Made by a program: the position numbers and the translations under genes
The notes under the pieces: generated by a model
Seen by the model: the letters and a program-made list of their open reading frames with translations, nothing else
Databases searched by the model: none
What the model was told of the DNA's origin: nothing
DNA from: Vitrella brassicaformis CCMP3155
Lineage: Eukaryota; Protista; Chromerida
NCBI GenBank assembly: GCA_001179505.1
Contig: CDMY01000753.1
Location: 1-24,059, forward strand
DNA: 24,059 nucleotides
Direction: 5' to 3'
Shown here: positions 2,191 through 19,788 of the stretch, piece by piece
Layout: every line of letters starts with the position of its first letter
Numbering within the stretch: the first letter of the stretch is position 1

Positions 2191-2433
2191 AAATCCGCCA
2201 TGGCCTTTGTGCACGAGCGTGAGCGGGACGACCATCAGTGCGGTGAGGCAGGTGCCAGAGGGGGCAACAAAATGGCAGCTTTACTGGATCTGCGACTGGC
2301 TCCCCCTGTATGGCTGCTCGGGCGGTTGTAAGCAGCCTCTCCGAACTAGGCAAACTTTAACGGGTCCGAGTGAAGGGTCAAATCGGGTGTAGTAACCATG
2401 GGTCCATTCGACGATGTCGAGAATCTCGACGTG

Positions 2434-2468
2434 CAGGCCCCCATTTGGCATGTGACCCACATACATAA
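2434..2468 (+). repeat. Outer segment of the left TIR
   Basis: CAGGCCCCCATTTGGCATGTGACCCACATACATAA matches the reverse complement of 8644-8678 (CAGGCCCCCAAATGGCAGTTGACCCACATACATAA) with about 4 mismatches. Confidence 0.85.
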
Positions 2469-2654
2469 CAAGTAAGGCGCCCAGGCAAGCTGAGCGCGGT
2501 GCACGACCCCCCAAGTGATTGGGGCGACTGTGCGTTTGACGAAGAATGCAGATGTGTCCAACAAACACGTCGATCACACCAGCCATGCGATGAGTAAAAG
2601 AACACATGTCCTTCTCCCTTTTGTAGCTGTGTGTATGTGTGTGGATGTGTCATG

Positions 2655-2756
2655 AGATAGGTACGAACACGAAGAGACATAGAATATCGCACAGGTAAGA
2701 ACAAGACGCACAGCACAATTGTGCCGAGATAGGTACAAAGACGAAGAGACAGAGAA
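2655..2756 (+). repeat. ~31-bp imperfect direct repeat inside the nested element
   Basis: gagataggtacgaacacgaagagacatagaa (~2655) versus gagataggtacaaagacgaagagacagagaa (~2726). Confidence 0.75.
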
Positions 2757-3658
2757 CACTACAAATCATGAAGGCAGGTATTGTGCAGTTGGGGTGAACT
2801 ACACGAATCATGAAGCATGCAGGGCGGATCACGAGGAGGACAGGCAAACAAGCGCAGATCAACAAACATGCGCAAATCAGCTTCTGCCAACGAAAAATGA
2901 CCGATGAGAAGAGTGTGCCTTCTTGATCTCGAGCCTATTGGCACGAGAGCCGATTGGTCCACGCTCTTGAGGAGCTTGCCCAGAGCCCTGACCACAGCAG
3001 CCCATCGTTCGCGTCCTTGTCGTTTGTGTCGATGGTGTCGCCGAACTTTGCAGACACAGACGAGAGAGGCGTCGTTGTGTGGGAGATGTGTCTGTGTGTG
3101 TGGTGTGTATGCCCGTGGTACCTCACCTGATGTCGATTCGCGCTGGCGACCCTGGCGGCTGTCGTTGTTGGGCAGTTCTGGGTGACTGTCTGCCAAGGAA
3201 CGCACTCACGTACAGGCACATGACTCTTACGGCAGGCAGTACGTTGCTTTGTCCTCTTACGGCGAGGGCATGAGTGCTTGGTAGCCGAGACCCAGTGCTC
3301 GCCGCACAGGCCGAACTTGTCGAGGCAGGCCCCGTTGCCTTCTGCATTCTGTACGGCGACGGGTTCTTGCTGGGGCATCAGTGGCGGGGGTGCATCACTG
3401 GGCACAAACACGTGCACGGGCACAAATGATTGCCTGACAGACACAGAGTCATCAGGAACAGATGAACCGGTCGGGGGGTAAGGTGTGTCCACGAGAATGA
3501 GTACCTGTGGATGTCGGCGGGCAGCGACTGTGTGTTCTCGTCGTCGGGCCACGCTGGTGAGAAGACCGGTGATGCAAGGGCGAGCGTGCGAAGACGAGGA
3601 AGGAGGAGAGAAAGAAAAGGAGCAGCCGCTGACGGCTGAAGAAGACGACTGAGTGCTG

Positions 3659-3721
3659 AGCTTGACAGACTGACTGCTGAGCTTTTAACAGACTGACTGC
3701 AGCTTTTAACAGACTGACTGC
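3659..3721 (+). repeat. Three ~21-bp subterminal tandem repeats
   Basis: (g)agctt(tta/g)acagactgactgc occurs three times near the right end of the nested element. Confidence 0.8.
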
Positions 3722-3815
3722 GAGGCGACTTTGGCAACCCCGGAAGAACCGATCGTACGCACGGAAAAAAAGTAGCCTAGAGCAGTCCCCCAGCTGGTGC
3801 TTTTGGGGGGTCGTG

Positions 3816-4080
3816 AAAATTGCAGAGAAGCAGCCCACCCGGCTGATCAAAAGCAAATGTGAACCGCCCATGTAAGAGCCTCTCACACACCAAGCAGCAG
3901 CTCCTCGCTCGGTCACGTTCTTTCACAATGGGAACCCTTCACCCTTCTAAGGGCGCCCCGTTCTCGGCAATCAAAGCAGCTGTGACCACCGGGCTGGGCG
4001 CATCTGAACGCTCACTCAAAGGGCATCCAAACATCATCACCTCACTCACTCTGGTTCGTGAGATATGATTCACTCAATTC
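3816..4080 (+). repeat. Inner segment of the left TIR (~265 bp)
   Basis: aaaattgcagagaagcagcccacccggctgatc...gagatatgattcactcaattc is the reverse complement of 8378-8645, near-identical in the outer part with small indels further in. Confidence 0.92.
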
Positions 4081-4132
4081 TGTCCGACCACTGCGTATCT
4101 GACTTGCTGCTTTCTCTGCAGTGACTTGACAG

Positions 4133-4483
4133 ACACGGACCGCCGCCAATTCCACGGCCGTCGCCCAGGTGATCTTCTCGTTCACGTCGACACACGAGTA
4201 CCCCAACGACATGGGTGCCGAGGGCGCCCCTGCTGCCGCCGCACAAGGAGCTGCTGCTGCTGCTGCGGCTGCCGCTGGTGGCGAGGAGGCAGGGGATGGC
4301 GAGGGCGACGGGGTGCAGCAGGATCACGACCTGTATGCCAACCACGATGATGACGATCCAGAGGGCCTCGAGGCCGTGCAGCAGGCGGCGCAGCTGTTTG
4401 GTGAAGCGCCCATCCAAGGATATATGGGCGCTGCGCTCGGCCATGGGGTCGACCACGCTGAGGTTGCAAATCTGATAGACTGA
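4133..4483 (+). CDS. Terminal-exon-like acidic/Ala-rich coding fragment convergent with the transposase
   Basis: The frame is open from 4130 to a stop at 4483 (...FTSTHEYPNDMGAEGAP...DHDLYANHDDDDPEGLEAVQQAAQLF...). A pyrimidine-rich tract and CAG acceptors (ending ~4121 and 4132) precede it. Confidence 0.5.
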   Translation, partial: TRTAANSTAVAQVIFSFTSTHEYPNDMGAEGAPAAAAQGAAAAAAAAAGGEEAGDGEGDGVQQDHDLYANHDDDDPEGLEAVQQAAQLFGEAPIQGYMGAALGHGVDHAEVANLID

Positions 4484-4693
4484 GAGTAGGTTGGTGTATG
4501 AGGTGGCGATGAGGAGCCTCATGGACTGATTGGTGTATCTCTGTGCATTGTACATACATTCGTATCAATCAATCGATGAATCATCGCAATTACCAGTCAA
4601 TCTGTCAATCATTGAATAGGTTACTCAATGCTGACACTTGCACCAACCACTGCTACGCCAATCATTCATTCTCTATATATTATCTACATTTCG

Positions 4694-7600
4694 CTAGATA
4701 AGAGGTGGTGTTCTACTGGGATATAGTTTGACCTGGGCTACAATTTCATTCCATTTCTCTTGCTGTTCCTCACCTATCTGTGGCAGCTCAAGCAATGGCA
4801 CCTCTGGCAATGGCCGGTCGTACTCATCGGCTGCAATCATCTGAGTGCTCACGTTGCTGGCGTAGCTCAACACAGCCCGATGCTTCTCACTCATCGAGGC
4901 CAGTATGTGTCTCTCCAGCTGCAGTTTGATTATTTGCAGTCCCAGCTCTGCCTTCACTTGTTTGCCGCCGCCCTTCATTGTGTGATTTTCTTCGATCAAA
5001 TGAGCCTCCTTGTTCACCGACTCGTGTGCTTGCATATTTAGGAGGCCGTATGGGGGCGCCATCCCATTCATCGACTCGACCAGGTGTGGAAGGACGTGGC
5101 ACTCGAGTAGATGCATCGAGGGTGTGTAGATGTCGAGCCACTTCAGCCCGAACGGCAGCAGTGAGCAACAGAAGCAGAGACATTAGTATGGGAGGAAGCG
5201 AATGAGAGAGCGCCTTACATTGTCAGGCCAACGACCTTCATCTGCCAGAGATGGCGGGAGAAAAGCCGAAGCTGATCCTCAATGGCAGGGGCAGGGGTTC
5301 TGAGGCAGAAGCGGATAACCCAGGCGTAGGACATGAAGAAGCACCAGAGTTTCCCCTTTTCCTTGGCTCCAACTTCCACGAGCAGAAGGAGGTAGTCGCG
5401 TATGTCTCTGGCCTGCAACCGGCTCTTGGGACTTTCCAAGACGCATTGATTCGGCAAGGATGGCTCGATCCTCCTGCTCAGTCTTGGACTGTGCCGCCCC
5501 TCCCTGTTCTCCCTCTTCAAAAACAATCGACGTCGAGGGCCTCCTTGACCTCGTCCTCACTGAGTGGCTTGATGCCTCCCTCAAACTCTGCCTGCTGAAA
5601 GTCTGCAATCTGCTCCTCCTCACGTGGCAGCACCTCAAAACAGGAAGGTGGAGCAGATGCCACGGTACTGCATGTCTTCATCGCACCTACCTCCGTCGGT
5701 AGCGATTGATTTGATCACTGGCATGAAGTTGAGGGGCAGTTTGAGATTGTCAGTAAGTCAAAACGTGCTTCTGTCTTTGCTGAACACACCTACTTGTTGT
5801 GTCTCATCCGCATGAGTTCGCTGCCGTCACCAGATATGCATAGTGGGATGGTGATTTCATCGTCAGCGGTCCATAGCTCGTCCTTGATCAGGTCCAGCCG
5901 CCAAACACCATCTACCACGCTGGGGTGGGTTTCGATCAGCCACTGGAGGAGCCGAAAGGGACTCACCTAGGTTGATGAGAAGTGCTCGTTGGCCTTGCGC
6001 GGATCACACGCATATCCAAGGGCACCGCCAGGACGGAGCAAATCGAAGAGGTCGACCTCTTCCAGTGAGGGCATGTAGTCATGTCTCTCCGTCTGGATGG
6101 CCTTCTTTGAGGGAAGAATGCGGGGCTTCTTCTTGCTCCGTGACCACCGTGTACGCCCGGGGAGGATGTCGTTGATCAAGAGGTTAGTGATGAGCTGCAG
6201 GCGTTGCCATCCAATGTGCAGCTTCAACTGAAGAGAACGGTACAACGACTCGCTCACACGACAGTAACGCTCCGCAAATCCTTTGACGACATCCAGCAAG
6301 GCATTCCGCAAAGAACCGACGGGCCGCGCATCTTCACCTTGCTGTCTCACTCTGTCCAGAAACAGCTGCCACACACCAGACAGGACGCCTCGAAGTATGC
6401 CGATGGGCCAGTTGAAGACGAAGAAGAGAGACAGCAGGCGAGTTAGATTGTTCTGCATCGACTGCAGCTTGCTTGAAGTACCGCCGTAGCTCCACCCCTT
6501 TGGACGAAATCTGCCGGCGAGGCCATTTATCCAGAGCAGGACCTCTACGGCGGCATCCGCCATCTTGTTGCGGCGCCGGTTCCCGGACTCGTCTCGAGAC
6601 GCTGCGTATTCGGTGATGGACTCCTCGGGACCGACAAGAGCCGATCCAACACTGGTGGTGATTCTCAGCTGACGCCATTTTTTGCCGCCTTTCTTCCCCT
6701 TCATTTTCTCTAACATCTCCACCTGCACATGAGCCGTGTGACTCTCATCTTGATCATAGTGGACCCGCCGAATGAGTGTCCAGGGTTCGTCGTTGTTGAC
6801 GTCCTTGTGCTTCGGCCCGATCTGCTTCTTGTTGGCGGACTCAGGACTCTCTGCCCCTGGACGTCCCTCTGCGTCTTGATCATCACTCATCTCCGCCTCC
6901 AGCTCCAGGGCGTCGTCATTATCTTCTCCGACGTCCTCCTCTGCGGCCATCAGAGGATCCAGCTCATCCTCTGTTTTCACCTGCACCAAGGGGCCTGCGG
7001 ATGTGGCTGCGGCTGCGGCAGCGGCTGCTGGCGGGCTCACATCCCTCGCAGGGATGTTCATGTCCTTCAGGCTGCGCGGAGTGGGGAAAGGACTGTCAGC
7101 CTCCTGATCAGACGGAAACTGATCCCAGTCATGAACATCTCCTTCTTCGGAAGATTTGATGGAAGATAGACGCTCCTCTGCATCTGACTGAAATCGGTCG
7201 TCTGTCTCCATTCCGGCAGGCCGAATTGACTCTTCTTCAATGAGGTCCTCGTCCCAGGCAGCAGCAGCAGCAGCAGCATGAGTCCGCTGTCTCTGCCGTC
7301 TCCGCTGTTTTGGAGCAGCTGCCGGTGCCGCAGCTGGTGGAGAGGCAGCCGCCGCTGCAGCTGCGGCGGTCGGAGAAACATCGCGGATCCCAGAAATGTA
7401 CTTGGAATAGGTGGCTCTGTCTTCTCTGACGCGTCTCTTGACACTGTGCGGGAGAGCCGTGAACTGGTCGTTCATCCGTCTCCAACGCGCTGAGAATCTC
7501 ATCTATGGCCACCTCTCGTGCCCGCTCTGTCTCCACCTGCTCGAGGACCTCTTGCCGTGAAGTGACCAAGCGCTCGAACAAGTCGATTGGCAGGCCTCCT

Positions 7601-8103
7601 GGCAAGGACGGGGTGAAAGTCGGGATATTGCTGATGTATTCTTGAAGATAATCCCGACACAACTTGACAAAACGATTAAACCGCGCTTCTTCCTTGCGGC
7701 AATTCTCCCATCCGCCCTCCATCAGACGCACCAGGGTACCGTCGGCCACTCTCCGTGCCTTCATCCTCTTTTTGAGGATTTCGACAATGCGGCGGGGCAG
7801 CGCTTTACCGCCGACAGTCAGTGCATCATCGTCGGCCTCCCACTCCGCTCGACGCTTCCGTTGGTTCAGCCCCGCGGCGGGAGACGCGGGTGCGGGTTGT
7901 AATGGTGGAGGCAATGGAGCAGGTGCGGCTGCCGCGGCAGCTGCAGCTGCCGGTACTCCTCCCCTCCCTCCGCCTGCAGCTGCCGGTCCTCCTCCCCTCC
8001 CGCCGCCACGAGCTCGTCTCCTCAGAAGAGGCCTGCCTTGGTCGTCCACGTCATCGCCCAAACGCGATATCCCCAGCTCAAAGCCACTGGGTGCGCCAGC
8101 CAT
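4694..8103 (-). pseudogene. Frameshifted RAG1/Transib-like DDE transposase with long N-terminal extension
   Basis: Collinear motifs across frames: SESLYRSLQ...ILPSKKAIQTERHDYMP (cf. RAG1 SCSQYHKMY...LLP), CISGDGS (D at ~5826), IATDGG (D at ~5695), LWCFFMSYAWVIR helix, TPSMHLLECH (H-x4-H, ~5096-5113) and QAHESVNK (E at ~5021; cf. RAG1 GNESGNK). Lesions: frameshift ~7475, in-frame TAG 5967-5969, and further stops/shifts at 5800-5400. Confidence 0.75.
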
Positions 8104-8377
8104 TGGTGGTGAGTTGGGTACCGGCTGAGATGCAGGCAGCCAAGTGGTGGTCTGCACAGTCAATGGGGAGAAAGCAGAGCGGCAGGTGGTGACCGTTTCT
8201 GTACAGACTTGCGTGACACATTTCTCGCGAACCAGAGCGAGTGCGAGGACCACCCTAAGGGAAACATGCATCAGCGGTCACTGCCCTTTGAGTGACGGTT
8301 CCAGCGGAGACGGCTACTAGCTTGACATGGGGGAAATGGGGGCAATGCATGCATGAAGTGTTTCACGCGTTTCACGC

Positions 8378-8678
8378 GAATTGAGTGAGTCATATCTCAC
8401 GAACCAGACTAAGCGAGGTGATGATGTTTGAAATGAATTGACAGTTCTTTGAGTGAGGGTTCAGATGCGCCCAGCGCGGTGGTCACAGCTGCTTTGGTTG
8501 CCGAGAACGGAGCGCTGTTAGAAGGGTGCCCATTGTGAATGAACGTGAGCGAGCGAGGAGCTGCTGCTTGGTGTGTGAGAGGCTCTTACATGGGCGGCTC
8601 ACATTTGCTTTTGATCAGCCGGGTGGGCTGCTTCTCTGCAATTTTATGTATGTGGGTCAACTGCCATTTGGGGGCCTG
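8378..8678 (-). repeat. Right TIR (~300 bp, uninterrupted)
   Basis: Reverse complement of 2434-2468 + 3816-4080. Read outward-in it begins (CA)CAGGCCCCC. Confidence 0.92.
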
Positions 8679-8984
8679 TGTCAGTGAGGCTGGGCGCCTC
8701 ATGACACCTAGCGGGGCGTCGGCCACGAGGGATCACCCTCGCCATCACGCGGGCCAACACAACCAAACGCTGCGGTAAGGGCCCAGCCAAAAGGTGGACC
8801 ACCCCTGCCTTGCTTGCGTGACCATAGCATCTGTGGTCGATGACTCGAAAAACCAACCCATCCCTCTGTCCTTGAGCTGACGAGTGCCCCACTCGCCCTC
8901 AGTCCTGACGTGCGGTTCAGAGCTGGCAGCCCCACGAAGCTGCCCATCCATCGATCCATCCAGGATCCCGTTCAGGTGTCCATC

Positions 8985-8999
8985 ATGGCAGACACCATC
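8985..8999 (+). pseudogene. First 5 codons (MADTI) of an ORF interrupted by the LTR retrotransposon; continues at 21938-22216
   Basis: Removing the element and one CATC copy rejoins ATG GCA GAC ACC ATC to CAT CCG TGC..., giving a 97-aa open frame. Confidence 0.4.
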
Positions 9000-10800
9000 T
9001 GTGGTGAGGTGCTCCCTCCCCACTGACTCATTGATTCTTCTTTCGAAGTACTTTTCGTTGCCCGCCACAGGTGCTCTAAGCCCTGTGCAAGGCGCCCTCC
9101 CAAGCAAATGCTTCGGAGACGGCTGAATTCTTTTCTTGTCTACATAACTGTAGCCTACATATCTGCAGCTCTGCCCTTCGTGCCCCGTCGCCCTCGAATT
9201 CGTTTCATGTATGCACTGCATGTTGTCTGCTGGGGGGCTGGCTGTCTGACTGGCTGACTGGGGAAATGGATGGAAATCGATGGGAAGGAAGGACTCGTTT
9301 TTCCGATGTACAGGCAGTGCCGCCCATCTGTGGGTTTACTTTGTCGATTGGTACTGGTTTGCGCCCGCGAGCGCTCGTCGAGTGACGAAATGACTGTCTG
9401 AAGAAGCGTCTGAGACACGCCTTGTTTGCTTTGATTGGAGTCTGTACGAGAGAGGAGAGGTGCTCTGCTTATTTCTGTGAGGGCCTATGTATTTACTTCA
9501 TGAAAGAAAGGCCGAGCAAGGGGAGACAGGAGTGCACAGGCTAGGAAAGAAGGCTGGCCGTGGCTGAGTTGTGTCGAGAGATGTGTAAATGCATGCGGGT
9601 CTGCATGCATACTCGCTGGTTTTACAAGGTGTACGCTAGTTCTACAGGGTGCGTACATAACGCCGTACGCACTGTAGGGCAAGGACATTTTTCGAATGCT
9701 CCAACTCTCCTTCATCACCCCCATTCCACTTCCAGTCCACCCGTGTGACTTCTGTCTTTGGTGCTTCTTCGTGCGGACAAAGCGACTTCGTTTGGTTTGA
9801 GTGAAAGAGACGTGTCGTTGTTGTCTGTCTTGCATCTGCGGAGGTGTTCCTCGAGCAGTCTTATTCCCTCGTGGCCTTTCTCGGCGTCTCGGAGCGGTCT
9901 TGGGCATCAGGAGCGGCTGCAAGGAGCTCAGGTATGACATTGACTGGCTGCGCTTGTGTGTGTGTGTTGGTCTGTGTCAGTGCTGAATGCGCCTGAGGTA
10001 ATCGGATGCCATCGGAGCGGGAGGCGGACCTCACGGATCCGGGACGTGCTCGCCTGAGTCGCGGTTGAATACGGGTTACTCAGGGTAAATGGCATGTACT
10101 GCCTGATGGGACGCCGCCTGTGGCTTCGTAAGAGCGAGTTGTACGCCCGTGAGGAGCCGAGACGCCTCGCTGACGGCGATCTGCTGAACGGGCTGCAAGA
10201 GAACACTCCGTTGAGGATGTTCTTGTGAGCTTCCGTATGCGATGAAGCAGAGTGGCAACAAAGGAGACATGGTGCGGCCATGCTCGCTTTGTGTGTCTTG
10301 GACGGCCGAACGAAAGCAATGAGAGAGTGACTCATTGACTTGTCGTTCTGTGCCTGGTCGACGGTGTGTTGACGAGATGGAGAGAAGACAGTGATTTTCC
10401 CTCTCGACGGACGGAATGTCTCTGTATGTTACGTATGGCTTCATGGCATCCCACCAGCCCTTCGTGTCTCTCTTGTTAGCTGAGACTCAGACCTCCCTTG
10501 TGAAGGTGTGGTGAATGGTTGCGTATAGGATGCGATGCGATTGGTCATCCTCATATTCGTTATTGAGCTGCGCTGGATGGAGACATGCGTCGAATGCAAT
10601 GTCCCTCATCGTGTGTCGGCTGGATTGGTTTGTATTTGATGATCGATCAATCCCTCTCGCCCACACGACCCTTTACATACGCTCGTGAACCATTCGTGCG
10701 ACGATGGGTCCTCGTTTGTTAATTACCGGCATGCATTCACTACACACGGTGGATGTCTTGTGTGTACGTCGCTCACACATCACTATCCCACCTCATGACA
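9000..10800 (+). repeat. 5' LTR (1801 bp)
   Basis: Starts TGTGGTGAGG and ends CCTCATGACA (8/10 imperfect terminal inverted repeat). Directly repeated at 19798-21933. Confidence 0.97.
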
Positions 10801-10807
10801 CTTATCG

Positions 10808-10824
10808 TGGCTCCCCTCCCGGGA
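10808..10824 (+). promoter_or_regulatory. Primer-binding site, probably tRNA-Asp
   Basis: TGGCTCCCCTCCCGGGA has reverse complement T-CCCGG-GAGGGGA-G-CCA. This fits T-stem + 7-nt acceptor strand + G discriminator + CCA, and resembles eukaryotic tRNA-Asp 3' ends (GGGGAGCCA). Confidence 0.7.
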
Positions 10825-11036
10825 GGGCATGAAGTGTTGTGTGATGCTGTATGAAGCCTTTGTGGTTTGAAAATGAAGAGGAAATCGGTTCTCCCTTTCC
10901 TGCTGTGCTGATTGGCAGATTGGGCGGACTCTTTGTTCAGTTGATTGTCTCGTCAATCAAAAATCATTTGTTGATTCACTGAATCACACCCGAGTGCGCA
11001 CCTATTTGAGACATCAAATAGCGTGTCCCTTGGTGT

Positions 11037-12864
11037 ATGCTACAAGCCCCAGGGGCTGGTGTGTTTGTCAATCCCAACGGACAACACGTTCAGTGGTGTG
11101 TCGGGGCAAATCGTTGGCGTGACATTCAGACAGGGCACATAGCAGTTGCTCCTGCGAATCACGCTGTTCCGATTCAACAAGCACCGCAGGCACCTGCTGC
11201 ACCAGCAGCTCCTCCTGCGCCTGCTCCTGTAGCACCGGCAGCCCAGCCAGTTCAACTTGATCCACTTCTTGCTGTCGCTGGCCCTGACGCTCATCTCGTC
11301 TTTGTAGACGGAGTTGACGCCATGGCTTTCTCTGAGCGCAACAACAAGATCAACTTCATTTGCAACAGCATTGGCACTTACAATGGCACTGTCGAGGGCC
11401 AGCCGGCCGAGCAGTTTGTCGATCGATTCACGCGAACGATCGGTGATGTCGGCCAGTTTTTCGGCCAAAGACAAACTTCTCACGTTGGGCCAGTGCCTGA
11501 GTGGCGAAGCGAAGGGCATCCTCGAGGGATACCACAAGAGGCATCCCATCTCTGATGCCGCGGCGAATGATCCCAACGATGCCTACTGGCAGACAGCGTT
11601 GGACGAAGTCATTGCCGACGTCAAGGCGACGTACGGCATCACTCCGGGCTTTGCCCGCCAAGCCGTCAAGATTCTGAGCAACCCGGCGTCGATCAATCAG
11701 ATCAAACCGGACGGTTCGTTGCGTCAGAGATTCACTGAGTTGGAGAAGATCATCAATGTGGCCGAGACGCAGGTCAAGCTCACCGATGAGCAGAAGGCCG
11801 ATGCGGCCATCTCGTTGCTGCCTCCCATATTGCAACCCAATCTGAAGGTTCAGATGGAGAACAACTGGGAGCAGCGCAAAGCGGTCTATCTCACCGGCGC
11901 AGCTGGTCGAGCCGAGACCGATGAGGAGTGCCCCAAACGCAAAGACTGCTACAACTTCCAACAGGCAAAGAGACACGCACTCATGTATGAGAATGCGTAT
12001 CCTGAGCCGGTTGCGCAGACCAACTTGAGTTACAAACACGAGGCCACTCGCTCACCTGATGTGGCGAAACTCATGGGTGCGTTTGGTGAGCTGCTCAAAC
12101 CATCGACGGACAGCATGGACAGTTTGTCGGCTGTGGGTGCCTTCGCCGCCCCCAAGCCGGCTGTCCCATTCGCTAGTCTCGCTGAGGCCGTCCAGTCCAC
12201 GATGAGTCCGTTCGCTGTGTCTTCTGGCTCCAAAGCCACGAAGGAAGAGAAACCAGCGAGCAACTTGGGCATGTCTCAGGGAGACTTAGCCAAACTCATC
12301 AAGGACTCGGTCGGCGAGAAGGTTGAGGAGGCGTTGGCGAAACAGAAGAAGGATGCTTCTTCGTCTCGCCCGTCCACCTTCTCCCGATATCGTTTCGGCG
12401 GCACCAATCGAGTGAGTGCGCTCGAGGAGGATGCTGCGTCCTCTGACGGCGACGACGAGGGAGACATCGTCTTCAAGTCGATGTTCTCGGCACTCATCGA
12501 GCAGAAGAGTATGCCCCCTGCCCAGGCTGCGAAGCTGGCACGGGCTGCTCAGGAAGCTGCCATCAAGTCGAGAGTTCCTTCCCACATGCGCACTGACGCA
12601 AGCACGAGTTCCGCGCCGTCCAGTTCGAGCACCTCGAACTCGGGAGGCGGCGGCAGAATTCAGTGCTATGAGTGCAAGGGCTTCGGGCACATCGCTGCTC
12701 AGTGTCCCAATAGGAAGAATGCTCAGTCATTCGCACAGCCATCGTGTCCTGCATGCGGCAAGCAGCACGCATTCGTCGATTGCGATTCTGAGGCTGCTCG
12801 CATACTCAGACGCGCGCATTCGGACACGGCGGCTGCCACCGACACTGCACGGTCGGGAAAGTGA
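11037..12864 (+). CDS. gag: Gag (~608 aa reconstructed), with one +1 frameshift at the T5 run 11457-11461
   Basis: Pro/Ala-rich N-terminus; capsid-like TYNG...EQFVDRF joins SAKDKLLTLGQCLSGEAK if one T is removed. Zinc knuckle CYECKGFGHIAAQC (CX2CX4HX4C) plus a second CPACGKQHAFVDC. Confidence 0.88.
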
Positions 12865-12905
12865 TCGGGCCGGACGAGCGGCAGGGCACCGCTACGTCTA
12901 TGGCC
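12855..12905 (+). promoter_or_regulatory. Predicted -1 programmed ribosomal frameshift signal (gag to pol)
   Basis: G GGA AAG heptamer (12855-12861) directly before the gag TGA; the -1 frame is open (12861-13166). A stem-loop GGCC-G-GACGAGCGG-cagggca-CCGCT-A-CGTC-TAT-GGCC starts 6 nt downstream. Confidence 0.65.
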
Positions 12906-14188
12906 GAGATCGTTTCTGCCATGCATGAGGTCGATGACGTCGATGTCTCGAATGTACAGCTGACGAGACATGACAATGTACAGTCGAATGGTGATGTACA
13001 GTCAAGTAGTGACAGACCTACATACCAGCAAGTCTTGAGGTCCAAGAAGTTTCGACTTGGAGGGATTTCGGTGGATTCTCTGCCGAAATCGAGACGGATC
13101 ATCACGCCGACAGGCAAAGTCCTGCAAGTGATGAAGCAGTACCCGATGATGCGTTTTTCGAATTGATATTCGAATGACGGTCGTCTTATTACCGTATCCA
13201 CAATCATTCCATCGCTGTCAACAAGAGAGAGTGGCGTTGGAATCCGCACGGTTGGTATCGATGCCCGGAGCTCGAATACAAGTATTGCGATCGGAGGATG
13301 GAGCCTCCTCGCTCGACACGCGAGCAGAGGGGCTACGCCTCTGACGCGGATGGTGGAAGATGGGACTCGTCTGATTCAGGCAGTTCATCGGCTGGCGATG
13401 ATTGTCAATCAGAGAGGGAGCTGCCCAATATCGTGCCGCGACGTTTGACGAGGAGGAAGCGTCAGCGCCTCCGGGACAAACGCGCAAAGCACGCGCGCAG
13501 GCATCTCTATTATCCTGACCAATCGTACGAGCAGATCTTTGCGAATTTTGCCGTGTTGCCCACCATACACGCGCATCTTCGGAGCACATCGCTCGAAAGA
13601 CATGCGTATGAGTTCAAGCAGGTCCACGCGCCTCTTTGGATGTATACGTATGTCCCTCCCCAGTCGACCCCTGCTATCCGGCCAACCCCGAAGCAGCGGG
13701 CTATTCCTCGTGAGATAGAGAAGGCTCGTACGCCTCCATCTTCTCGTGAGACTACAAAGAGGAGGAAGAGACAGCGGGAAGCAAAGAAGGCGAGTCAGTC
13801 ATCCAAGTTCACGGCTGTAGATGAGTCTCACCAGCCGCCCTCCTCTTCTGGCTCGAAGCAAGATGTCTCGATGACCTCACCGGTGATCGATGTGTCTTCC
13901 TTCGTTCCTGACGTCAAGAAGTCTATTCGGTATTGGTTGTTGTCGCTCTTGGCTCTCTTCTGGTTGGTACTCGTCGCGAGCGCCGCCAAAGGGTCAATGC
14001 CTGAGAGAAAGACAATCATCAAGAGCCCACTCCGATGGACAAAGACCCTTGCTGAGCTCAAGAGCTGGTTCACAGGGGCCATCGTTCAAAGGAGAAACAT
14101 CTCATGCTGTACGATAGCCTCAATGAGGGGCGCATCTTGGATGAGATGCTTCGTTCAGGCTATCGTGAGTGGGAGACCGTTTCACTGA
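12861..14188 (+). pseudogene. Pol N-terminal extension (disrupted ORFs 12861-13166 and 13178-14188)
   Basis: Consecutive sense frames between gag and pol contain basic runs (RRLTRRKRQRLRDKRAKH; KRRKRQREAKK) and a hydrophobic segment (IRYWLLSLLALFWLVLVASAA). The frame breaks near 13164-13177 and 14056-14100. Confidence 0.55.
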
Positions 14189-17100
14189 AAGCGTTCTGTC
14201 AGCATGTGTTGACATTTCTGTCTTGGCTGCTCTTGGCCGCCGTTGCATTCATGCACGGCGTGTCTGGCAGCAACACAATCGTTTCTTCCATATTTTCTCT
14301 CTTCACTGGCTTAGCTTCGCTGCTTGCCCAGCGACCTAAGCAATTCATACGTACAGACAAATTGGAAGGCTGTCGACTGCATGCATATCGTGCTGCATGC
14401 GGCCTGACTTCGTTCTTCTCGTTTGTCCCACTTACTTGGGTGGCCCTCATTGTAGCTTTCTGTAGCGCTTTGATGTCTTGTCACGCATTGGCGGGGCTGG
14501 AAGGTGGCCGTTCAGCCGTACTTGCCTGCATGGATCAGCAAGGGAATAAGACGTTCCTGTCGAGTGTCGAAGGAACGGGCTTTCGTCTCACCACTTCTGT
14601 CTGGCTTGGTTCACGCAAGAGGGGCGATTCTGTCTCCGCCTTGGTGGATACAGGTGCAGATAATAGTTATATGTCATTTTCCCTGTATCGCACTCTGCGT
14701 CAATTTGGGATTGTTGACGATCTGCAGCCGACATGGAGAAGGCCTTACAGTGAAGGAGGTCTTCCCTTGAAGGCCAAAGGCAAAGTGCGATTAACGCTTG
14801 CTCACCCAGAGTCAATGGCTGGAGTGACACCGATTTATTTCGATGTGACAGTGGTAGAGAACATGACCACGGACTTGATCCTTGGTGGTGATTTTCTTCA
14901 CTATCACTGTCGAAATATAGACATACAGAATATGAAGCTGTATTTGTCTCGCTGGTCGCCGATGTGTCTCTTCCATGCTCGGGCTGTGTCTCCCGACATG
15001 CGAGGGTCAGCGGCCAGCCGTCTGACAAAGGACCTCTCGAGGAGAGGCCTGGACAGACACTCACCTGCGACTTCGATTGTCTCTTCGATTGAGGGACAGA
15101 AATCGAAGAAAGCTCAAAGAAAACCCAAGGTTCGTCTGCAAGGCGGAATGCCGGTGGCTCGCGCGTCAGCCAGTCACTCCATTCCTGCCTGGACGATGGC
15201 GGTTGTTGAAGCTGAGCTGCCCGACTCAGATTTGTCTGAGGGGACAGAAGGCCTCATCGAACCGCTGAGGTGCTGTCCTTTTCAACAACGGCTTTGTGTT
15301 GCAAATGCACTGGTGACAGTGCGAACCGCTCACCTGACCGTCAAGAACACAGACAGAAAGAGAAAAGCTACGGTGGTGTACGTGCCAGTAGCTAATTTCT
15401 CTCCCAGACCTGTCAAAATTCAGATCGGTACTGAGATTGGCAAATTCGTGCCAATGCAGCTGATCAAACACGAGAACGTGATGCCTGTCATGGATAAGGC
15501 CACGTATCGTGTACGAGACAAATCTTTGCTGGAAGGCTTGGATTTGCCGTCATTTGCCACTGTCGAAGAGGATTCCTCACTTGGCAAAGACGAGAAGGGC
15601 CGAGACATTGCTGAGGTCTTGTATACAAACTGTCCGTTCGTCAAGCCTGAGACAGATGAGATAGCTGCTGTCGCTACTCACCTCTCGAAGGCCGATGCGG
15701 TGGAAACTCATGTGATCGATCCCGATTGCTGTGTTTCCGCTGTGGCTTCGTTTCCATCCAAAGGAGACGTGGATGAGGATGAGTTGCCCGACGCCCAGCG
15801 CGTCGTCTCGCCCGATCATCCACTTGCTCCCGATCCATCTGACGATGATCCCATCATCGAAGATGAAACGGAAGAGCAGAATGAGCCAGTGCAAGGCTCC
15901 CACGACGACCCAGTAATTCAGGAAAATCCTGATTTGAGTCGATCGAGGGACGGCACTTGGTTGCATTCATCGCCTGACCCGAAAGAGACAGATGAGCCAC
16001 CAGTGCAAGAATTTGCGCGAAGGGAAGACTCACCGAATTTCTCTCGAGTCGGCGCCAGGCAATACGTGAAAGAGGACTTGTCGCATGTCGACAAGATCAA
16101 CTTCCTTGTGTATCCTGAGGATAAACATGGGCAAACTCAAACACAGAAAGCTATCATTCATAGCTTGGCTTGTGAGTTTGAGGATTGCTTCTCGAGCGAA
16201 AAGATTCCGTATGGCAAAGGCAAGCTGGTCTACCATTATATTGAGGTGAAGGGCCAGCCTCCTTATGAGCCTGCACGAAATCGACGCTCACCAGCGAAAG
16301 CAGCAGAAGAGCAGAGGCAAGTGGATGACATGTTGAAGGAGGGAATGATCCGCCCTTCGTCATCACCTTACTGTGCCCCTGTTGTTCTTGTGCGGAAGAA
16401 GGATCCGAATCAATGGCGTCTCGTCGTTGATTACCGACCCTTGAATGCGCAAACTGTCTTGGATAACTTTGTGCTTCCTCGCATTGATGAGACCTTGGAT
16501 GCCCTCGCGGGACATTCATGGTTTGCGACGCTCGACTTGGCAAAAGGTTTCCATCAGATTCCGATGGCTGAGTGTGACAAACACAAGACAGCCTTTGCAG
16601 TTGCTGGTCGAGGACAGTTTGAGTATGAGTTCCTACCCATGGGCCTCTCAAACTCCGTCGCTACCTGTCAACGATTCATGGAGGTTTGCTTGGCTGGTCT
16701 GCAGTGGCAAACATGTCTCGTCTACCTCGATGATATCTGCGTCATGGCAAGAAGCCATGAAGAGCTCTGCACACGCTTGCGTGAAGTCTTTGAGCGTGTC
16801 CGAGCTGCGAATATTCGATTCAAGCCCTCAAAGTGTGTTCTCGGCACGAGGCGAATTGATTACCTTGGTCATTCTGTCACGGCCAAGGGCGTCAAGCCGC
16901 TCAAGGAGAAAATACAAGCTGTCGCTGACTTTCAGTTGCCCAGCAACAAGAAAGAGCTCCACAGCTTCGTCGGCTTGTGTCAATATTATCGCCGATTTGT
17001 GCAGGATTTTGCAGTGATTGCTGCTCCTTTGACGGACAAGCTCAGTGCAAAAGCACCTGACAAATTCGCGTGGACATCAGAGATGAGGGAGGCATTCTAT

Positions 17101-19788
17101 CGTCTCAAGAAGGAGCTCTGCAGTGAGCCCATCCTTCGCCTACCCGATTTCTCTAAGACATTCATCTTGAAGACAGACGCCAGTGACCGTGGAGTCGGTG
17201 GCGTGCTGGTTCAAGAGGATGCGGATGGAACAGAGCATCCTGTCCTTTATGTCTCTCGCAAGTTTAACGCCACGGAGGAGAAGTCCTGGTGGCCAACAGA
17301 GAAAGAGGCATTCGCTCTGTACTGGTGTGTGAAGACTCTTCGTCCTTACCTGGACGGGAGGCACTTCATCATCAAGACCGATCACTCTGCTTTGAAGTAC
17401 ATCAAAGCATGGAGAGAGATCAACCAGAAGGTCCAGAATTGGAGCCTGCTCCTCCAAGACATGGACTTTGAGGTGCGGCACAAGAAAGGCAAGCTGCATC
17501 GAGATGCTGACGCCATCTCGCGGCTCTGCGCCATGGCTGCCAAAGCTTGTGGTTGCACAGAGGAAGAGTGGCGCTCGATGGTCAACACCATCGAGGAGGA
17601 CTTCGACGAAATGCCTGAAGAGGGCAGTCCGCTCTCAGCAGACATTCTGAGAAGTGAAGCGTCCGCTCATTGGCCAAGTGATGAAGAGATCATCACTTTG
17701 CAACGAAACGATGAAGAGCTGGGTCAAACATGTGAGTATCTGACCACGGGCAAGGAACCAAGCGACGAGAAAATCGCAAGGATGGTCCGCTCGGGCTCTT
17801 ACGAGTTTTCGTTGATCGATAGAAAATTATTCCGAATTTTCCGAGCACCCAGCAGAGGGATAACGCCGTGTCTCGTTGTTCCTCCGCCTCTTCGCGAGAA
17901 GGTGCTCTACGAGAATCACGGCCATGTGTTGGCTGGCCATCTCGGTCTCCAGAGAACTGTGTCTCGCATTTCTCTGCGATACTGGTGGAGAGGCATGTAT
18001 GACGACATTAAGAGATGGGTCATGAATTGTCCAGTGTGTCGTGCGGCGCGACAGCGCCCGACGACTCACTGGCCTCTCAAACCCATCCCGGTGACTCGTG
18101 CGTTTGAGTTGGTCGGCATGGATATTGTTGGACCGCTGCCTGAGTCACACAATGGCAATCGTTACATGCTTGTCTTCATGGATTACCTGACAAAATGGCC
18201 TGAGGTATTTCCGATGAAGGACATGACGGCTCTCGCTGTCGCTGAGTGCTTGGCTTGGTTTGTTGCCCAGCATTCAGTGCCGAAAGCCATTTTGATTGAC
18301 CAGGGCTCGCAGTTGAAGTCGAAGGAGCTTCAGAAAATCTGCGATGTCTATGGCATACACCACAAATATACAACACCAGCACATCCAGAGACGGATGGCT
18401 TGGTGGAGCGATTCAACCAAACCCTTGTCCACCAACTCAAGAAGCTGGTAGACATGAAGGAGAATCGCTGGGAGAAATATCTTCCGTATGTGTTGTTTGC
18501 TTACCGTGTCACCACGCAGCAGAGCACGAACCATACGCGGTTTGAGATGGTGATGGGTCGACAAGCTCGTCTGCCGGGTGATCAGTCTTTGGTTGCAATG
18601 GACATGCTGTCCGGCATTGAACCAGAAGACTATGTCGAGGTGCTGCGCGAAGGCCTCGAGATCCTGCACAAGGAGGCTCGGGAGAACATCGCAAAGCAGC
18701 AAGAGAAGATGGCCCAAAAGTCAGCTTGGGCCGCAGAGAAGCTGCCCCGATATGAGATCGGGCAGATGGTTCGTCTCCATTTGAAGCAGATTCCGAAAGG
18801 AACCAGCTCGAAATTCGCTCTCCCTTGGCGAGCGATTTTCCGAGTCGTCGACGGCTTCAACAATGGATTGAACTACCGCATTCAGCCTCTTGGTGGACAA
18901 CAGGTGATGAATGTGCATGTCTCTCGCTTGGCACCCGCTTATAAAAGCAAATGGCTCCAGGAATCCCCTGAGAAGCCAGAGAGCTTTAAGCAGGTGACCA
19001 TCGAACACAGGCCCACCGCACCAGCGAACGTCTTGGACGAGACGGACACCGGTGAGGTGTGGGAAGTGCAAGAGATACTCGATATGCGCACCAGGAGAGA
19101 CGGGCGCCGCGACTATCTCGTCAAGTGGAATCTCCTGCCGCGTAGCTTGGCGGAGTGGATTCCAGAAGAACAGCTCTTCTGTCCGAAGCTCTGCAGTGAC
19201 TTCGAACGGAGAAAGAGAATGATCGATGCGAAGAAGCAATCAGAGCGGTACGTGAAAGCTCAAGCTGTAGCTGCAAGTCGCGCCAAAGTTGGCGGCCTTG
19301 ACTTCACTGAGACGCCCAGATTGCAGCAAGAGCCTGCAAAAGGAAAGCAACCGACCTTTGAGCAGATCAAAGTGGGCCAGGTTCTCCTTTTGTTTCATCC
19401 TGAGTCGCATGGCATTTACTACGTGAATGTGTTGGCAAAGGATGGAGACGGCATTGAAGCTCGCTATCTGCCGAAGAGCTCGAAGGTAGAGGTCGAGCAG
19501 GGCAAGTTCAGACACCCTGCTGGATACTCCACTCGCTTCTCGCGCAGAGAGCTTGAGAAACACTACACTTGGCGGATCATGGGAGACGCCGAAGTGCGAG
19601 CCCTTCCCAAAAGGAAGGCACTGAAGATTCCTGCTCCTCCTCAGGCAGCGCAAGCGCCCCCTGCATCACAGCATGCCGGGGCCGCACAACAAAGAGCGGC
19701 GTCGACGGAGCGTAGAACCTCGCAGAGACTCGCTGACAGGCGGGCTGCGCAGAGTTCATCGTCGACCGAGGACGCTCGACGTCAATGA
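14104..19788 (+). CDS. pol: Pol polyprotein: PR-RT-RNase H-integrase-chromodomain (1894 aa open)
   Basis: LVDTGA (14641-14658); RT motifs SPYCAPVVLV, VDYRPLN, LDLAKGFHQI, PMGLSNS, YLDD (16723); RNase H TDASD, EKEA, TDH; integrase HGHVLAGH...CPVC, MDIVG, DQG, DGLVERFN. Confidence 0.97.
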   Translation: MLYDSLNEGRILDEMLRSGYREWETVSLKAFCQHVLTFLSWLLLAAVAFMHGVSGSNTIVSSIFSLFTGLASLLAQRPKQFIRTDKLEGCRLHAYRAACGLTSFFSFVPLTWVALIVAFCSALMSCHALAGLEGGRSAVLACMDQQGNKTFLSSVEGTGFRLTTSVWLGSRKRGDSVSALVDTGADNSYMSFSLYRTLRQFGIVDDLQPTWRRPYSEGGLPLKAKGKVRLTLAHPESMAGVTPIYFDVTVVENMTTDLILGGDFLHYHCRNIDIQNMKLYLSRWSPMCLFHARAVSPDMRGSAASRLTKDLSRRGLDRHSPATSIVSSIEGQKSKKAQRKPKVRLQGGMPVARASASHSIPAWTMAVVEAELPDSDLSEGTEGLIEPLRCCPFQQRLCVANALVTVRTAHLTVKNTDRKRKATVVYVPVANFSPRPVKIQIGTEIGKFVPMQLIKHENVMPVMDKATYRVRDKSLLEGLDLPSFATVEEDSSLGKDEKGRDIAEVLYTNCPFVKPETDEIAAVATHLSKADAVETHVIDPDCCVSAVASFPSKGDVDEDELPDAQRVVSPDHPLAPDPSDDDPIIEDETEEQNEPVQGSHDDPVIQENPDLSRSRDGTWLHSSPDPKETDEPPVQEFARREDSPNFSRVGARQYVKEDLSHVDKINFLVYPEDKHGQTQTQKAIIHSLACEFEDCFSSEKIPYGKGKLVYHYIEVKGQPPYEPARNRRSPAKAAEEQRQVDDMLKEGMIRPSSSPYCAPVVLVRKKDPNQWRLVVDYRPLNAQTVLDNFVLPRIDETLDALAGHSWFATLDLAKGFHQIPMAECDKHKTAFAVAGRGQFEYEFLPMGLSNSVATCQRFMEVCLAGLQWQTCLVYLDDICVMARSHEELCTRLREVFERVRAANIRFKPSKCVLGTRRIDYLGHSVTAKGVKPLKEKIQAVADFQLPSNKKELHSFVGLCQYYRRFVQDFAVIAAPLTDKLSAKAPDKFAWTSEMREAFYRLKKELCSEPILRLPDFSKTFILKTDASDRGVGGVLVQEDADGTEHPVLYVSRKFNATEEKSWWPTEKEAFALYWCVKTLRPYLDGRHFIIKTDHSALKYIKAWREINQKVQNWSLLLQDMDFEVRHKKGKLHRDADAISRLCAMAAKACGCTEEEWRSMVNTIEEDFDEMPEEGSPLSADILRSEASAHWPSDEEIITLQRNDEELGQTCEYLTTGKEPSDEKIARMVRSGSYEFSLIDRKLFRIFRAPSRGITPCLVVPPPLREKVLYENHGHVLAGHLGLQRTVSRISLRYWWRGMYDDIKRWVMNCPVCRAARQRPTTHWPLKPIPVTRAFELVGMDIVGPLPESHNGNRYMLVFMDYLTKWPEVFPMKDMTALAVAECLAWFVAQHSVPKAILIDQGSQLKSKELQKICDVYGIHHKYTTPAHPETDGLVERFNQTLVHQLKKLVDMKENRWEKYLPYVLFAYRVTTQQSTNHTRFEMVMGRQARLPGDQSLVAMDMLSGIEPEDYVEVLREGLEILHKEARENIAKQQEKMAQKSAWAAEKLPRYEIGQMVRLHLKQIPKGTSSKFALPWRAIFRVVDGFNNGLNYRIQPLGGQQVMNVHVSRLAPAYKSKWLQESPEKPESFKQVTIEHRPTAPANVLDETDTGEVWEVQEILDMRTRRDGRRDYLVKWNLLPRSLAEWIPEEQLFCPKLCSDFERRKRMIDAKKQSERYVKAQAVAASRAKVGGLDFTETPRLQQEPAKGKQPTFEQIKVGQVLLLFHPESHGIYYVNVLAKDGDGIEARYLPKSSKVEVEQGKFRHPAGYSTRFSRRELEKHYTWRIMGDAEVRALPKRKALKIPAPPQAAQAPPASQHAGAAQQRAASTERRTSQRLADRRAAQSSSSTEDARRQ
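14590..14960 (+). other. Retroviral-type aspartic protease domain
   Basis: ALVDTGADNSYMS and DLILGGDFL motifs. Confidence 0.92.
16340..16885 (+). other. Reverse transcriptase domain
   Basis: Ty3/Gypsy RT motifs with catalytic YLDD. Confidence 0.97.
17155..17520 (+). other. RNase H domain
   Basis: FILKTDAS...EKEAFAL...IKTDHSAL...ADAISR. Confidence 0.95.
17900..18920 (+). other. Integrase (HHCC zinc finger, DDE core, degenerate GPY/F module)
   Basis: H-x4-H...CPVC; GMDIVG / IDQGS / LVERFN; KFALPWRAIFRV...NYRI at the GPY/F position. Confidence 0.95.
19051..19206 (+). other. Chromodomain
   Basis: EVWEVQEILDMR...YLVKW...EWIPEEQL..KLCSDF matches the chromodomain pattern. Confidence 0.9.

What the first reader, a model, noticed from the sequence alone, without database searches (positions are those of the whole stretch)
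2434..8678. RAG1/Transib-like transposon with ~300-bp TIRs in a probable protist genome
Sequence: reading across frameshifts gives, in order, an S-x2-LY...ILPS motif, D (ISGDG), D (ATDG), a helical LW..F..Y region, TP-x2-H-x4-H and Q-x2-E-S-x-NK. Established: H(3-4)H before the catalytic E typifies the CACTA-Mirage-Chapaev and Transib/RAG1 group. Inference: this is a member of the RAG1-related lineage. It is unusual for its ~300-bp TIRs, a right terminus reading CACAGG (RSS-heptamer-like CACAG) and its apparent host lineage. The D1-D2 spacing (~45 codons) is shorter than RAG1's ~108, so either a deletion or a new family.
Basis: partly seen in the sequence, partly recalled or inferred. Interest (0 to 1): 0.8.

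Follow-up and report, generated by a model that had tools for sequence, protein, structure and literature searches.

The report
Decayed RAG1-like transposon in Vitrella
This is a dead, internally deleted copy of a rare jumping gene in the alga Vitrella brassicaformis whose cutting enzyme is a very distant relative of the immune recombinase RAG1.

Summary
The genome is Vitrella brassicaformis, a chromerid alveolate. The element lies on the minus strand.

- **Ends.** The true left end is at 2291/2292 (5'-CGCGACTGGCTCCCCC), not 2434. The terminal inverted repeat is about 500 bp. The left arm is split by an unrelated nested repeat (2469-3815). The right arm is cut at 8678 by other transposons and lacks its outer 142 bp. 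The "CACAGG heptamer" is that junction.
- **Catalytic residues.** D1 (ISGDG), H-x4-H and the E (QAHESVNK) are real and conserved among copies. This copy has lost about 245 codons holding the true D2 and a CxxC pair. Other copies keep them, as D-93-D-19-CxxC.
- **Kinship.** Pfam and single-sequence searches find nothing. A family profile hits only RAG1 among solved structures (E 1.4e-4). A model of the core matches only RAG1, HzTransib and BbRAGL (Z 5.5-7.1, next 3.6). The nearest sequence relatives are uncharacterised protist proteins, one from Spongospora.

RAG1-type kinship at the level of the CACTA-Mirage-Chapaev-Transib clade is supported. Membership of Transib proper is not shown: the ends lack CAC, and flanking duplications are 5 bp in one pair and 3 bp in another. 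The scan had already noted this family on two other pieces of this genome.

The parts
2291..2468 (+). Outer part of the left terminal inverted repeat. The true left terminus reads 5'-(T)GCGACTGGCTCCCCC; the first base is C in 10 of 12 ends.
   Evidence: Terminus defined by 12 ends with diverging flanks. 2292-2468 matches both ends of other copies.
2469..3815 (.). Unrelated nested repeat inserted into the left TIR. It is not part of the element.
   Evidence: More than 50 matches elsewhere in the genome. The right arm is continuous across this point, and the junctions show a 2-bp duplication.
3816..4143 (+). Inner part of the left TIR, including subterminal repeats of about 100 bp.
   Evidence: Inverted-repeat arms I1-I4 and I10. 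Matches to the TIRs of other copies up to 4143, with the 3997-4133 unit repeated in tandem in other copies.
4694..5182 (-). C-terminal transposase piece. It holds H-x4-H (HLLECH, about 5096-5113), the catalytic E (QAHESVNK, E at 5021-5023), the HTMKGGG motif, and a stop codon at 4694-4696.
   Evidence: ORF and translation. Conserved in 8 genomic copies. hhalign to the protist relative P0015 gives E 1.7e-4 in register.
5215..5681 (-). Frame-shifted remnants of the helical region between the zinc motif and E (…LQARDIRDY…KLWCFFMSYAW…, VLPREEEQ…).
   Evidence: Three-frame translation. tblastn to the C80 copy piece.
5682..5789 (-). Deletion junction. The second half of the RNase H fold with D2, the CxxC pair and the PDILH motif are missing (about 245 codons compared with the paralogs).
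   Evidence: P0001 residues 507-690 and the C80 204-aa piece have no counterpart in the window. Alignments.
5790..5966 (-). Piece carrying the first catalytic aspartate (CISGDGSELMRMR, D at 5826-5828).
   Evidence: D1 is conserved in all copies and in the protist relatives.
5967..7502 (-). 511-aa ORF covering the low-complexity N-terminal region plus a conserved helical region before the RNase H fold (SESLY…, RILPSK). It ends at an in-frame TAG (5967-5969) where the paralog has Tyr.
   Evidence: It is protein P0003 of the databases and is 42% identical to the C226 copy.
7237..8271 (-). Upstream 344-aa ORF in another frame, a possible N-terminal exon. It has no recognisable domain, and its first codons overlap the TIR.
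   Evidence: No Pfam family.
8150..8678 (+). Right TIR (inner part with a duplicated subterminal repeat), truncated. The outer 142 bp are absent from the window.
   Evidence: The outer segment occurs only at 2292-2433 in the window.
8679..21827 (+). Other transposons that cut off the right end. They are not part of the element: a 320-bp repeat (8679-8998), then a Ty3/gypsy chromovirus-type LTR retrotransposon (LTRs from 8999 and from 19797).

Best explanation
Window 2291-8678 is a dead, non-autonomous copy of a low-copy cut-and-paste DNA transposon of Vitrella brassicaformis.

**The family's transposase.** It is a very divergent RNase-H-fold DDE enzyme of the RAG1/Transib type. The order of its motifs is:
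- D1 in (I/F)SGDG;
- D2 93 residues later, in GDQ/SDQ, followed by a conserved phase-0 intron;
- a CxxC pair exactly 19 residues after D2, as in RAG1 (D708 to C727);
- a long helical insertion;
- H-x4-H, then E 25 residues later.

**Inferred mechanism, by homology with HzTransib and RAG.** The enzyme binds the long inverted ends and their subterminal repeats, nicks at the 5'-CGCGAC termini, and releases the element through hairpins on the flanking DNA. It then inserts the element with a short staggered cut, 5 bp in one intact copy.

**This copy cannot do any of that.** It has a nonsense codon, frameshifts, and a deletion of about 245 codons that removes D2 and the CxxC pair. Its left end is split by one transposon and its right end is cut off by others.

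**Classification.** The family belongs to the CACTA-Mirage-Chapaev-Transib clade. Its exact lineage (Transib, a CMC branch, or a new protist branch) is not settled.
For: **Host.** The paralog P0001 is named Vitrella brassicaformis CCMP3155. The genome has 72.7 Mb in 1064 contigs, as published (PMC4501334).

**It is a transposon.** Ends are sharply defined in 12 copies. Two short copies carry both ends: C346 (1.8 kb) and C701 (2.8 kb). Several divergent, decayed transposase lineages are present.

**Motif conservation.**
- D1, D2 and CxxC.
- H-x4-H, E and TMKGGG.
- Spacings D-93-D-19-C; the 19 is identical in four protist relatives.
- GT..AG introns at the same site after D2 in two lineages that are about 27% identical.

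**Kinship.**
- Exhaustive phmmer over 1.84 billion proteins finds only Vitrella paralogs plus P0004 (E 7.9e-4) and P0005 (E 9.9e-4).
- P0005's family includes a Spongospora subterranea protein.
- Profile A7 against solved structures: the top 15 are all RAG1, E 1.4e-4, next family 0.35 (weaker versions).
- The AF2 model built on that alignment has pLDDT 60-90 in the RNase H part.
- Foldseek's top 35 are RAG1 or HzTransib, probability up to 0.99, with BbRAGL at rank 44.
- VIA-align over 48,161 chains: RAG1, HzTransib and BbRAGL at Z 5.5-7.1, next 3.6, P element 3.2.
- ESM Atlas: RAG1 clusters at 0.97, TM 0.55-0.62.

**Flanking duplication.** GTGAC on both sides of the C701 copy.
Against: - No Pfam family, including the RAG1 domain models, reaches E 10 for any piece.
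- Single-sequence phmmer against solved structures finds nothing.
- The C-terminal profiles (H-x4-H...E) hit nothing among solved structures, so the identity of the E rests on motif order only.
- The structural model is mediocre overall (mean pLDDT 52.6). It was built on a shallow alignment, and TM-scores to RAG1 are low (0.27-0.30).
- The profile that reaches RAG1 includes the non-Vitrella relatives.
- The termini are CG...CG, not CAC...GTG.
- The C346 copy shows a 3-bp (CAA) flanking match, not a 5-bp one.
- No intact copy was seen, so activity is entirely inferred.
Confidence: 0.85

Rival explanations
1. It is a member of the Transib superfamily proper, a deep protist branch that shares the immediate ancestry of Transib and RAG1 rather than of EnSpm or Chapaev.
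For: - The best and only strong structural and profile matches are RAG1, HzTransib and BbRAGL.
- Atlas look-alikes carry RAG1 Pfam domains and none carries an EnSpm domain.
- The D2-to-CxxC spacing of 19 equals RAG1's.
- One copy has a 5-bp flanking duplication, the Transib hallmark (PMC1131882).
- Copy number is low, as is typical of Transib (PMC4411706).
Against: - No CMC-type structure is solved, so any clade member would hit RAG1. This was seen for ESTA in PMC12730594.
- The termini lack the CACAATG heptamer.
- The TIRs are about 500 bp with subterminal repeats, not 38 bp.
- The second intact pair shows 3 bp.
- The element and its protein are much larger than canonical Transib, and the gene has introns.
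Confidence: 0.4
2. It belongs to a CMC-type lineage (EnSpm/CACTA, Chapaev, Mirage, ESTA, Plavaka, Lanisha) or to a new sister lineage inside the same clade, and its resemblance to RAG1 reflects only the shared core.
For: - All these lineages share C(2)C and H(3-4)H between D2 and E and make 2-5 bp duplications (PMC12730594).
- Long subterminal repeat regions and multi-intron genes recall EnSpm (my own knowledge).
- The C346 copy has a 3-bp CAA flanking match.
- Sequence isolation is extreme: only two borderline non-Vitrella hits in 1.84 billion proteins.
Against: - No hit to the EnSpm Pfam families.
- The termini are not CAC/CACTA.
- A 5-bp duplication in the C701 copy lies outside the 2-4 bp CMC range, although 3- and 5-bp duplications both occur among close Transib relatives (10.64898/2026.08.26.747230).
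Confidence: 0.45
3. It is not a transposon but a host gene family, or a domesticated transposase, that happens to lie between inverted repeats.
For: - Introns at conserved positions.
- Gene models exist in the public annotation.
Against: - Every copy seen is broken in a different way.
- The same ends flank short non-coding derivatives in C346 and C701.
- Ends are sharply bounded, with unrelated flanks at a dozen loci.
Confidence: 0.03
4. The protein belongs to an unrelated DDE superfamily (hAT, Mutator, P, Kolobok) that also carries ES.N-type motifs.
For: An E-S-x-N motif after the catalytic E is widespread among DDE transposases (my own knowledge).
Against: The exhaustive structural search gives the P element transposase Z 3.2, against 5.5-7.1 for RAG1, Transib and RAGL, and lists no hAT, Mutator or piggyBac chain. 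The CxxC and H-x4-H pairs sit at RAG1-like positions.
Confidence: 0.03

Closest known systems
RAG1 and RAG-like transposases (mouse and zebrafish RAG1; amphioxus BbRAGL/ProtoRAG)
   Same: - They are the only significant profile hits among solved structures and the best structural matches.
- D1, D2 and the CxxC pair align with D600, D708 and C727/C730.
- The D2-to-C spacing is 19 in both.
- H-x4-H lies shortly before the catalytic E (25 residues here, 20 in RAG1).
   Different: - Sequence identity is about 13-17% in the structural alignments.
- No RAG2-like second gene is present in the element.
- No RING or N-terminal zinc domain was detected.
- The ends are not RSS-like.
- The host is an alveolate alga.
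Canonical Transib transposons (insect Transib1-5, HzTransib)
   Same: - Same fold (HzTransib Z 6.6, rmsd 3.8 over 131 residues).
- Low copy number.
- One intact copy has a 5-bp flanking duplication.
- Inferred hairpin-on-flank cut-and-paste mechanism.
   Different: - Transib has 38-bp TIRs starting CACAATG, elements of 3-4 kb and a transposase of about 700 aa (PMC1131882).
- Here the TIRs are about 500 bp and start CGCGACTGG, the element is longer than 5.5 kb without the nested inserts, the protein is roughly 1000 aa or more, and the gene has introns.
- HzTransib is not found by the sequence profile at all.
CMC lineages and other members of the CACTA-Mirage-Chapaev-Transib clade (EnSpm, Chapaev, Mirage, ESTA, Plavaka, Lanisha)
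   Same: - DDE with C(2)C and H(3-4)H between D2 and E, and 2-5 bp duplications (PMC12730594).
- Subterminal repeats and introns, as in EnSpm (my own knowledge).
- A 3-bp flanking match in one copy.
   Different: - The termini are not CA..TG.
- No match to the EnSpm Pfam models.
- No solved structure or reference sequence was at hand for a direct comparison.
Uncharacterised protist proteins: Spongospora subterranea A0A0H5RB55 (P0006) and metagenomic relatives P0004-P0015
   Same: - They are the nearest sequence relatives outside Vitrella (E about 1e-3 over the whole 1.84-billion library).
- They share GDG, the SHS...E segment, GD(M/Q)K(F/W)I.L..G, CxxC at +19, P.D.LH, TP.MH..E.H, Q..E..N and TMKGGG.
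   Different: - About 25-30% identity over the core.
- They lack the long low-complexity N-terminus.
- No convincing inverted ends were found around two of them.
- They are unnamed and unstudied.

Membership tests
CACTA-Mirage-Chapaev-Transib (CMCT) clade, as defined in PMC12730594 | [quoted passage not shown] | tested here: met
   At family level the order is D495, D588, C607-x2-C610 (P0001), then HLLECH and QAHE (window, C80, C945). These are conserved across copies. The window copy itself lacks D2 and CxxC through deletion.
CACTA-Mirage-Chapaev-Transib (CMCT) clade | 5'-CA..TG-3' termini (stated to hold 'in most cases') | tested here: not met
   The termini read 5'-CGCGACTGG...CCAGTCGCG-3' in 12 ends.
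CACTA-Mirage-Chapaev-Transib (CMCT) clade | Target-site duplications of 2-5 bp | tested here: inconclusive
   Only two copies with both ends were available: GTGAC/GTGAC (5 bp) in C701, and CAA/CAA (3 bp, no 5-bp match) in C346.
Transib superfamily (PMC1131882) | 5-bp target-site duplication | tested here: inconclusive
   One of the two intact pairs shows it. The window copy has no right end.
Transib superfamily | RSS-like 38-bp TIR beginning CACAATG or CACNNTG | tested here: not met
The terminus is CGCGACTGG.
Transib superfamily | Transposase core significantly similar to Transib transposases and the RAG1 core | tested here: met
   Met at profile and fold level only: RAG1 E 1.4e-4; RAG1, HzTransib and BbRAGL Z 5.5-7.1. 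Not met by single-sequence or Pfam searches.
Transib superfamily | Phylogenetic placement inside Transib+RAG1 rather than CMC | not testable with these tools
   No Repbase or RepeatPeps reference sequences or CMC structures were available.
RAG-like (RAG1L-RAG2L) transposons | A RAG2-like second gene inside the element | tested here: not met
   There is no further sizeable ORF with any Pfam family between the TIRs.
CMC (EnSpm/CACTA, Chapaev, Mirage) | CACTA/CAC termini and 2-4 bp duplications | tested here: not met
   The termini are CGCGAC. The duplications seen are 3 bp in one pair and 5 bp in the other.
CMC (EnSpm/CACTA) | Match to the EnSpm transposase Pfam models (Transposase_21 and associated domains) | tested here: not met
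   No Pfam hit at E up to 10 for Vitrella proteins or their relatives.

The most novel reading that the evidence does not exclude
The Vitrella elements, together with the Spongospora and metagenomic relatives, form a previously undescribed, superfamily-level lineage of RAG1-type transposons native to SAR protists (alveolates and rhizarians). The lineage has its own end structure: TIRs of about 500 bp, CGCGAC termini and subterminal repeats. If so, the RAG1/Transib-style zinc-braced DDE core was already diversified in early eukaryotes, well outside animals and fungi.
Probability: 0.35. Interest if true: 0.6.

Novelty: new variant of a known kind. Interest (0 to 1): 0.42.

Why it matters
RAG1, the enzyme that assembles antibody and T-cell receptor genes, descends from Transib-type transposases. 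These are known almost only from animals and one rust fungus (PMC1131882).

A family with the same zinc-braced catalytic core, and now with identifiable transposon ends, in a photosynthetic relative of apicomplexan parasites widens the host range of this enzyme type to the SAR supergroup. It has relatives in a plasmodiophorid. It also supplies very divergent sequences for rooting the Transib/CMC/RAG1 tree.

This window adds the end structure that earlier notes on this genome lacked. The copy itself is a wreck, and the wider clade (EnSpm and others) is already known to be widespread, so this extends a known picture and does not overturn it.

Tried and rejected
**Searches that found nothing**
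- Pfam scans of all pieces, the paralogs and the relatives gave no relevant family.
- phmmer of single pieces against solved structures gave nothing.
- Profiles of the C-terminal H-x4-H...E region against solved structures gave nothing.
- The word-index protein search with the paralog, and later with alignment A6, returned only Vitrella proteins.
- The Atlas look-alike search of the window's C-terminal piece returned only unnamed clusters.
- A search for inverted ends around the relatives P0007 and P0004 gave nothing convincing.
- Literature searches found no report of Transib in Vitrella or other SAR protists. Absence from this library is weak evidence.

**Methods that failed**
- Single-sequence AlphaFold of P0001:300-690 gave pLDDT 36.7 and was unusable.
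- MAFFT alignments of exon fragments with few rows were misaligned and were discarded (A2 and A3).

**Readings rejected**
- The 2434/8678 boundaries.
- CACAGG as a heptamer.
- ATDG as D2.
- A short D1-D2 spacing as a family trait.

**Not done**
- The exon and frame pieces were never joined into one protein.
- No read mapping was done.

Full report
**Host and setting.** The window is contig C753 of a 72.7-Mb genome in 1064 contigs. A paralogous protein is named in the databases as Vitrella brassicaformis CCMP3155. The assembly figures match the published chromerid genome, which reports only about 1.5 Mb of transposable elements (PMC4501334).

**The repeat and its true limits.** The inverted repeats are real. 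The arm pairs are:
- 3816-3940 with 8521-8645, 97% over 125 nt;
- 3940-4021 with 8447-8528, 93%;
- 4028-4080 with 8378-8430, 92%;
- 2434-2468 with 8644-8678, 89%.

When the right arm is compared with other genomic copies, homology does not stop at CCTG (8678). In most copies it continues as CACGTCGAGATTCTCGAC..., and that sequence lies in the window to the left of 2434. Whole-locus comparison carries the left arm out to 2292.

At that point 12 independent ends share 5'-GCGACTGGCTCCCCC. They are preceded by C in ten ends and by T in two, and the flanks then diverge completely. The terminus is therefore 5'-CGCGACTGG at window 2291.

The left arm is 2291-2468 plus 3816-4143. It is split by a 1347-bp member of an unrelated repeat family that has more than 50 genomic matches. 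The junction shows a 2-bp duplication.

The right arm (about 8150-8678, with a duplicated subterminal unit) lacks the outer 142 bp, which occur nowhere else in the window. At 8679 another repeat family begins. It is followed from 8999 by a chromovirus-type LTR retrotransposon, with RT, RNase H, integrase and chromodomain in a 1894-aa ORF and LTRs 97-99% identical.

**The coding region.** All pieces lie on the minus strand.
- A 511-aa ORF (5967-7502) ends at a TAG where the paralog has tyrosine.
- The same frame continues to CISGDGSELMRMRHNK, which holds D1.
- Paralogs then carry about 245 codons that this copy lacks. The paralogs are C226 (database protein P0001, 702 aa) and C80 (P0002).
- The missing stretch holds the second half of the RNase H fold, with D2 in FILGDQ, and then KWIGLILGLAGSAAANPCQRC.
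- The C-terminal piece (4694-5182) carries HLLECH and QAHESVNK.

Across copies and lineages, D1, D2, CxxC, H-x4-H and E are all conserved.

In P0001 the spacing is D495-93-D588-19-C607. The second histidine precedes E by 25 residues in the window.

A GT..AG phase-0 intron sits directly after the D2-Q codon in both the C226 and C945 lineages, which are about 27% identical in protein. Every copy examined is defective in its own way.

**Family assignment.**
- *What failed.* Pfam finds nothing. Single-sequence phmmer against solved structures finds nothing. The word-index search finds only the protein itself.
- *Nearest relatives.* An exhaustive phmmer search of P0001:205-690 against 1.84 billion representatives returns only Vitrella paralogs plus two borderline proteins: P0004 (E 7.9e-4) and P0005 (E 9.9e-4), with E-values for the whole library. 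P0005 belongs to a small family that includes a Spongospora subterranea protein.
- *Shared motifs.* These relatives share the D1 and D2 contexts, CxxC at exactly +19, P.D.LH, TP.MH..E.H, Q..E..N and TMKGGG. hhalign of the Vitrella C-terminal profile against P0015 gives E 1.7e-4, in register.
- *Profile against solved structures.* A profile of Vitrella fragments plus these relatives (A7) has RAG1 as its top 15 hits (E 1.4e-4). The match is aligned on D708 and C727/C730, and the next family scores 0.35. Smaller profiles gave 0.002 and 0.005.
- *Structure.* AlphaFold on A7 gave a modest model (mean pLDDT 52.6, but 60-90 over the RNase H part). Foldseek's 35 best chains are RAG1 or HzTransib, with BbRAGL at rank 44 (best E 1.8e-3, probability 0.99). 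An exhaustive VIA-align search of 48,161 chains gives RAG1, HzTransib and BbRAGL as the only six chains with Z of 5 or more (5.5-7.1). The next chain scores 3.6 and the P element transposase 3.2.
- *Look-alike search.* The ESM Atlas had already put RAG1 clusters first (0.97, 196 of 256 features; TM 0.55-0.62).

**How far the assignment goes.** All lineages of the CACTA-Mirage-Chapaev-Transib clade share C(2)C and H(3-4)H. Another of its lineages, ESTA, was likewise recognised through an HHpred hit to RAG1 (PMC12730594). Only RAG1, RAGL and Transib have solved structures. My hits therefore establish clade membership, not membership of Transib.

The classical Transib hallmarks are a 5-bp duplication and a CACAATG-led 38-bp TIR (PMC1131882).
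- The termini here clearly differ.
- Only two copies with both ends could be read. C701 has GTGAC on both sides. C346 has no 5-bp match but a 3-bp CAA.
- A recent preprint reports both 3-bp and 5-bp duplications among close Transib relatives (10.64898/2026.08.26.747230). The mixture is therefore not disqualifying, but it is not decisive either.
- The long ends with subterminal repeats of about 100 bp, the introns and the large protein recall EnSpm as much as Transib.
- No RAG2-like gene is present.

**Mechanism.** By homology, I infer a cut-and-paste cycle with hairpin formation on the flanking DNA and staggered integration. Nothing here tests it, and this copy is certainly inactive.

**Limits of this work.**
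- The exon and frame pieces were searched separately, by reference, and were never joined. The catalytic E could therefore not be placed in a model.
- Two earlier notes of this scan on other pieces of the same genome reached the same general reading. They were treated as leads only. What this window adds is the transposon ends.

Noticed in passing
window 8999-21827: An apparently young Ty3/gypsy chromovirus-type LTR retrotransposon. Its LTRs (from 8999 and from 19797) are 97-99% identical. It has an uninterrupted 1894-aa ORF (14104-19788) with RT, RNase H, integrase and chromodomain.
   Followed up: partly
window 2469-3815: A 1347-bp member of a repeat family with more than 50 genomic matches, nested in the left TIR. 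It shows a 2-bp duplication at the junctions. Its type is unknown.
   Followed up: partly
window 8678/8679 and L038:6199/6200 (C647): Two different copies of the element carry unrelated insertions at exactly the same point of the TIR (CCTG | CACGTCGAG). The one in C647 is a 9-kb insert flanked by CTG. This could be a hot spot or a coincidence; it is unexplained.
   Followed up: partly
L036:5344-7183 (C346): A 1.8-kb non-autonomous copy sits inside what reads as a coding exon (…AVQEAAL | element | KAIDQMMDIMGEQKC, then GTAAGT). It must either disrupt the gene or be spliced out as an intron.
   Followed up: no
L033:254-4188 (C945), L032 (C909), L034 (C1026), L035 (C381): At least four further lineages of the same transposase family, 25-45% identical, are present in the genome. 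All are broken. C945 keeps D1, D2, CxxC, H-x4-H and E, with two small introns.
   Followed up: partly
L071:6001-7769 and L072:6001-7250 (metagenome contigs): Relatives of the family lie on 40-kb and 307-kb eukaryotic metagenome contigs as multi-exon genes without obvious inverted ends. The organisms are unknown.
   Followed up: partly
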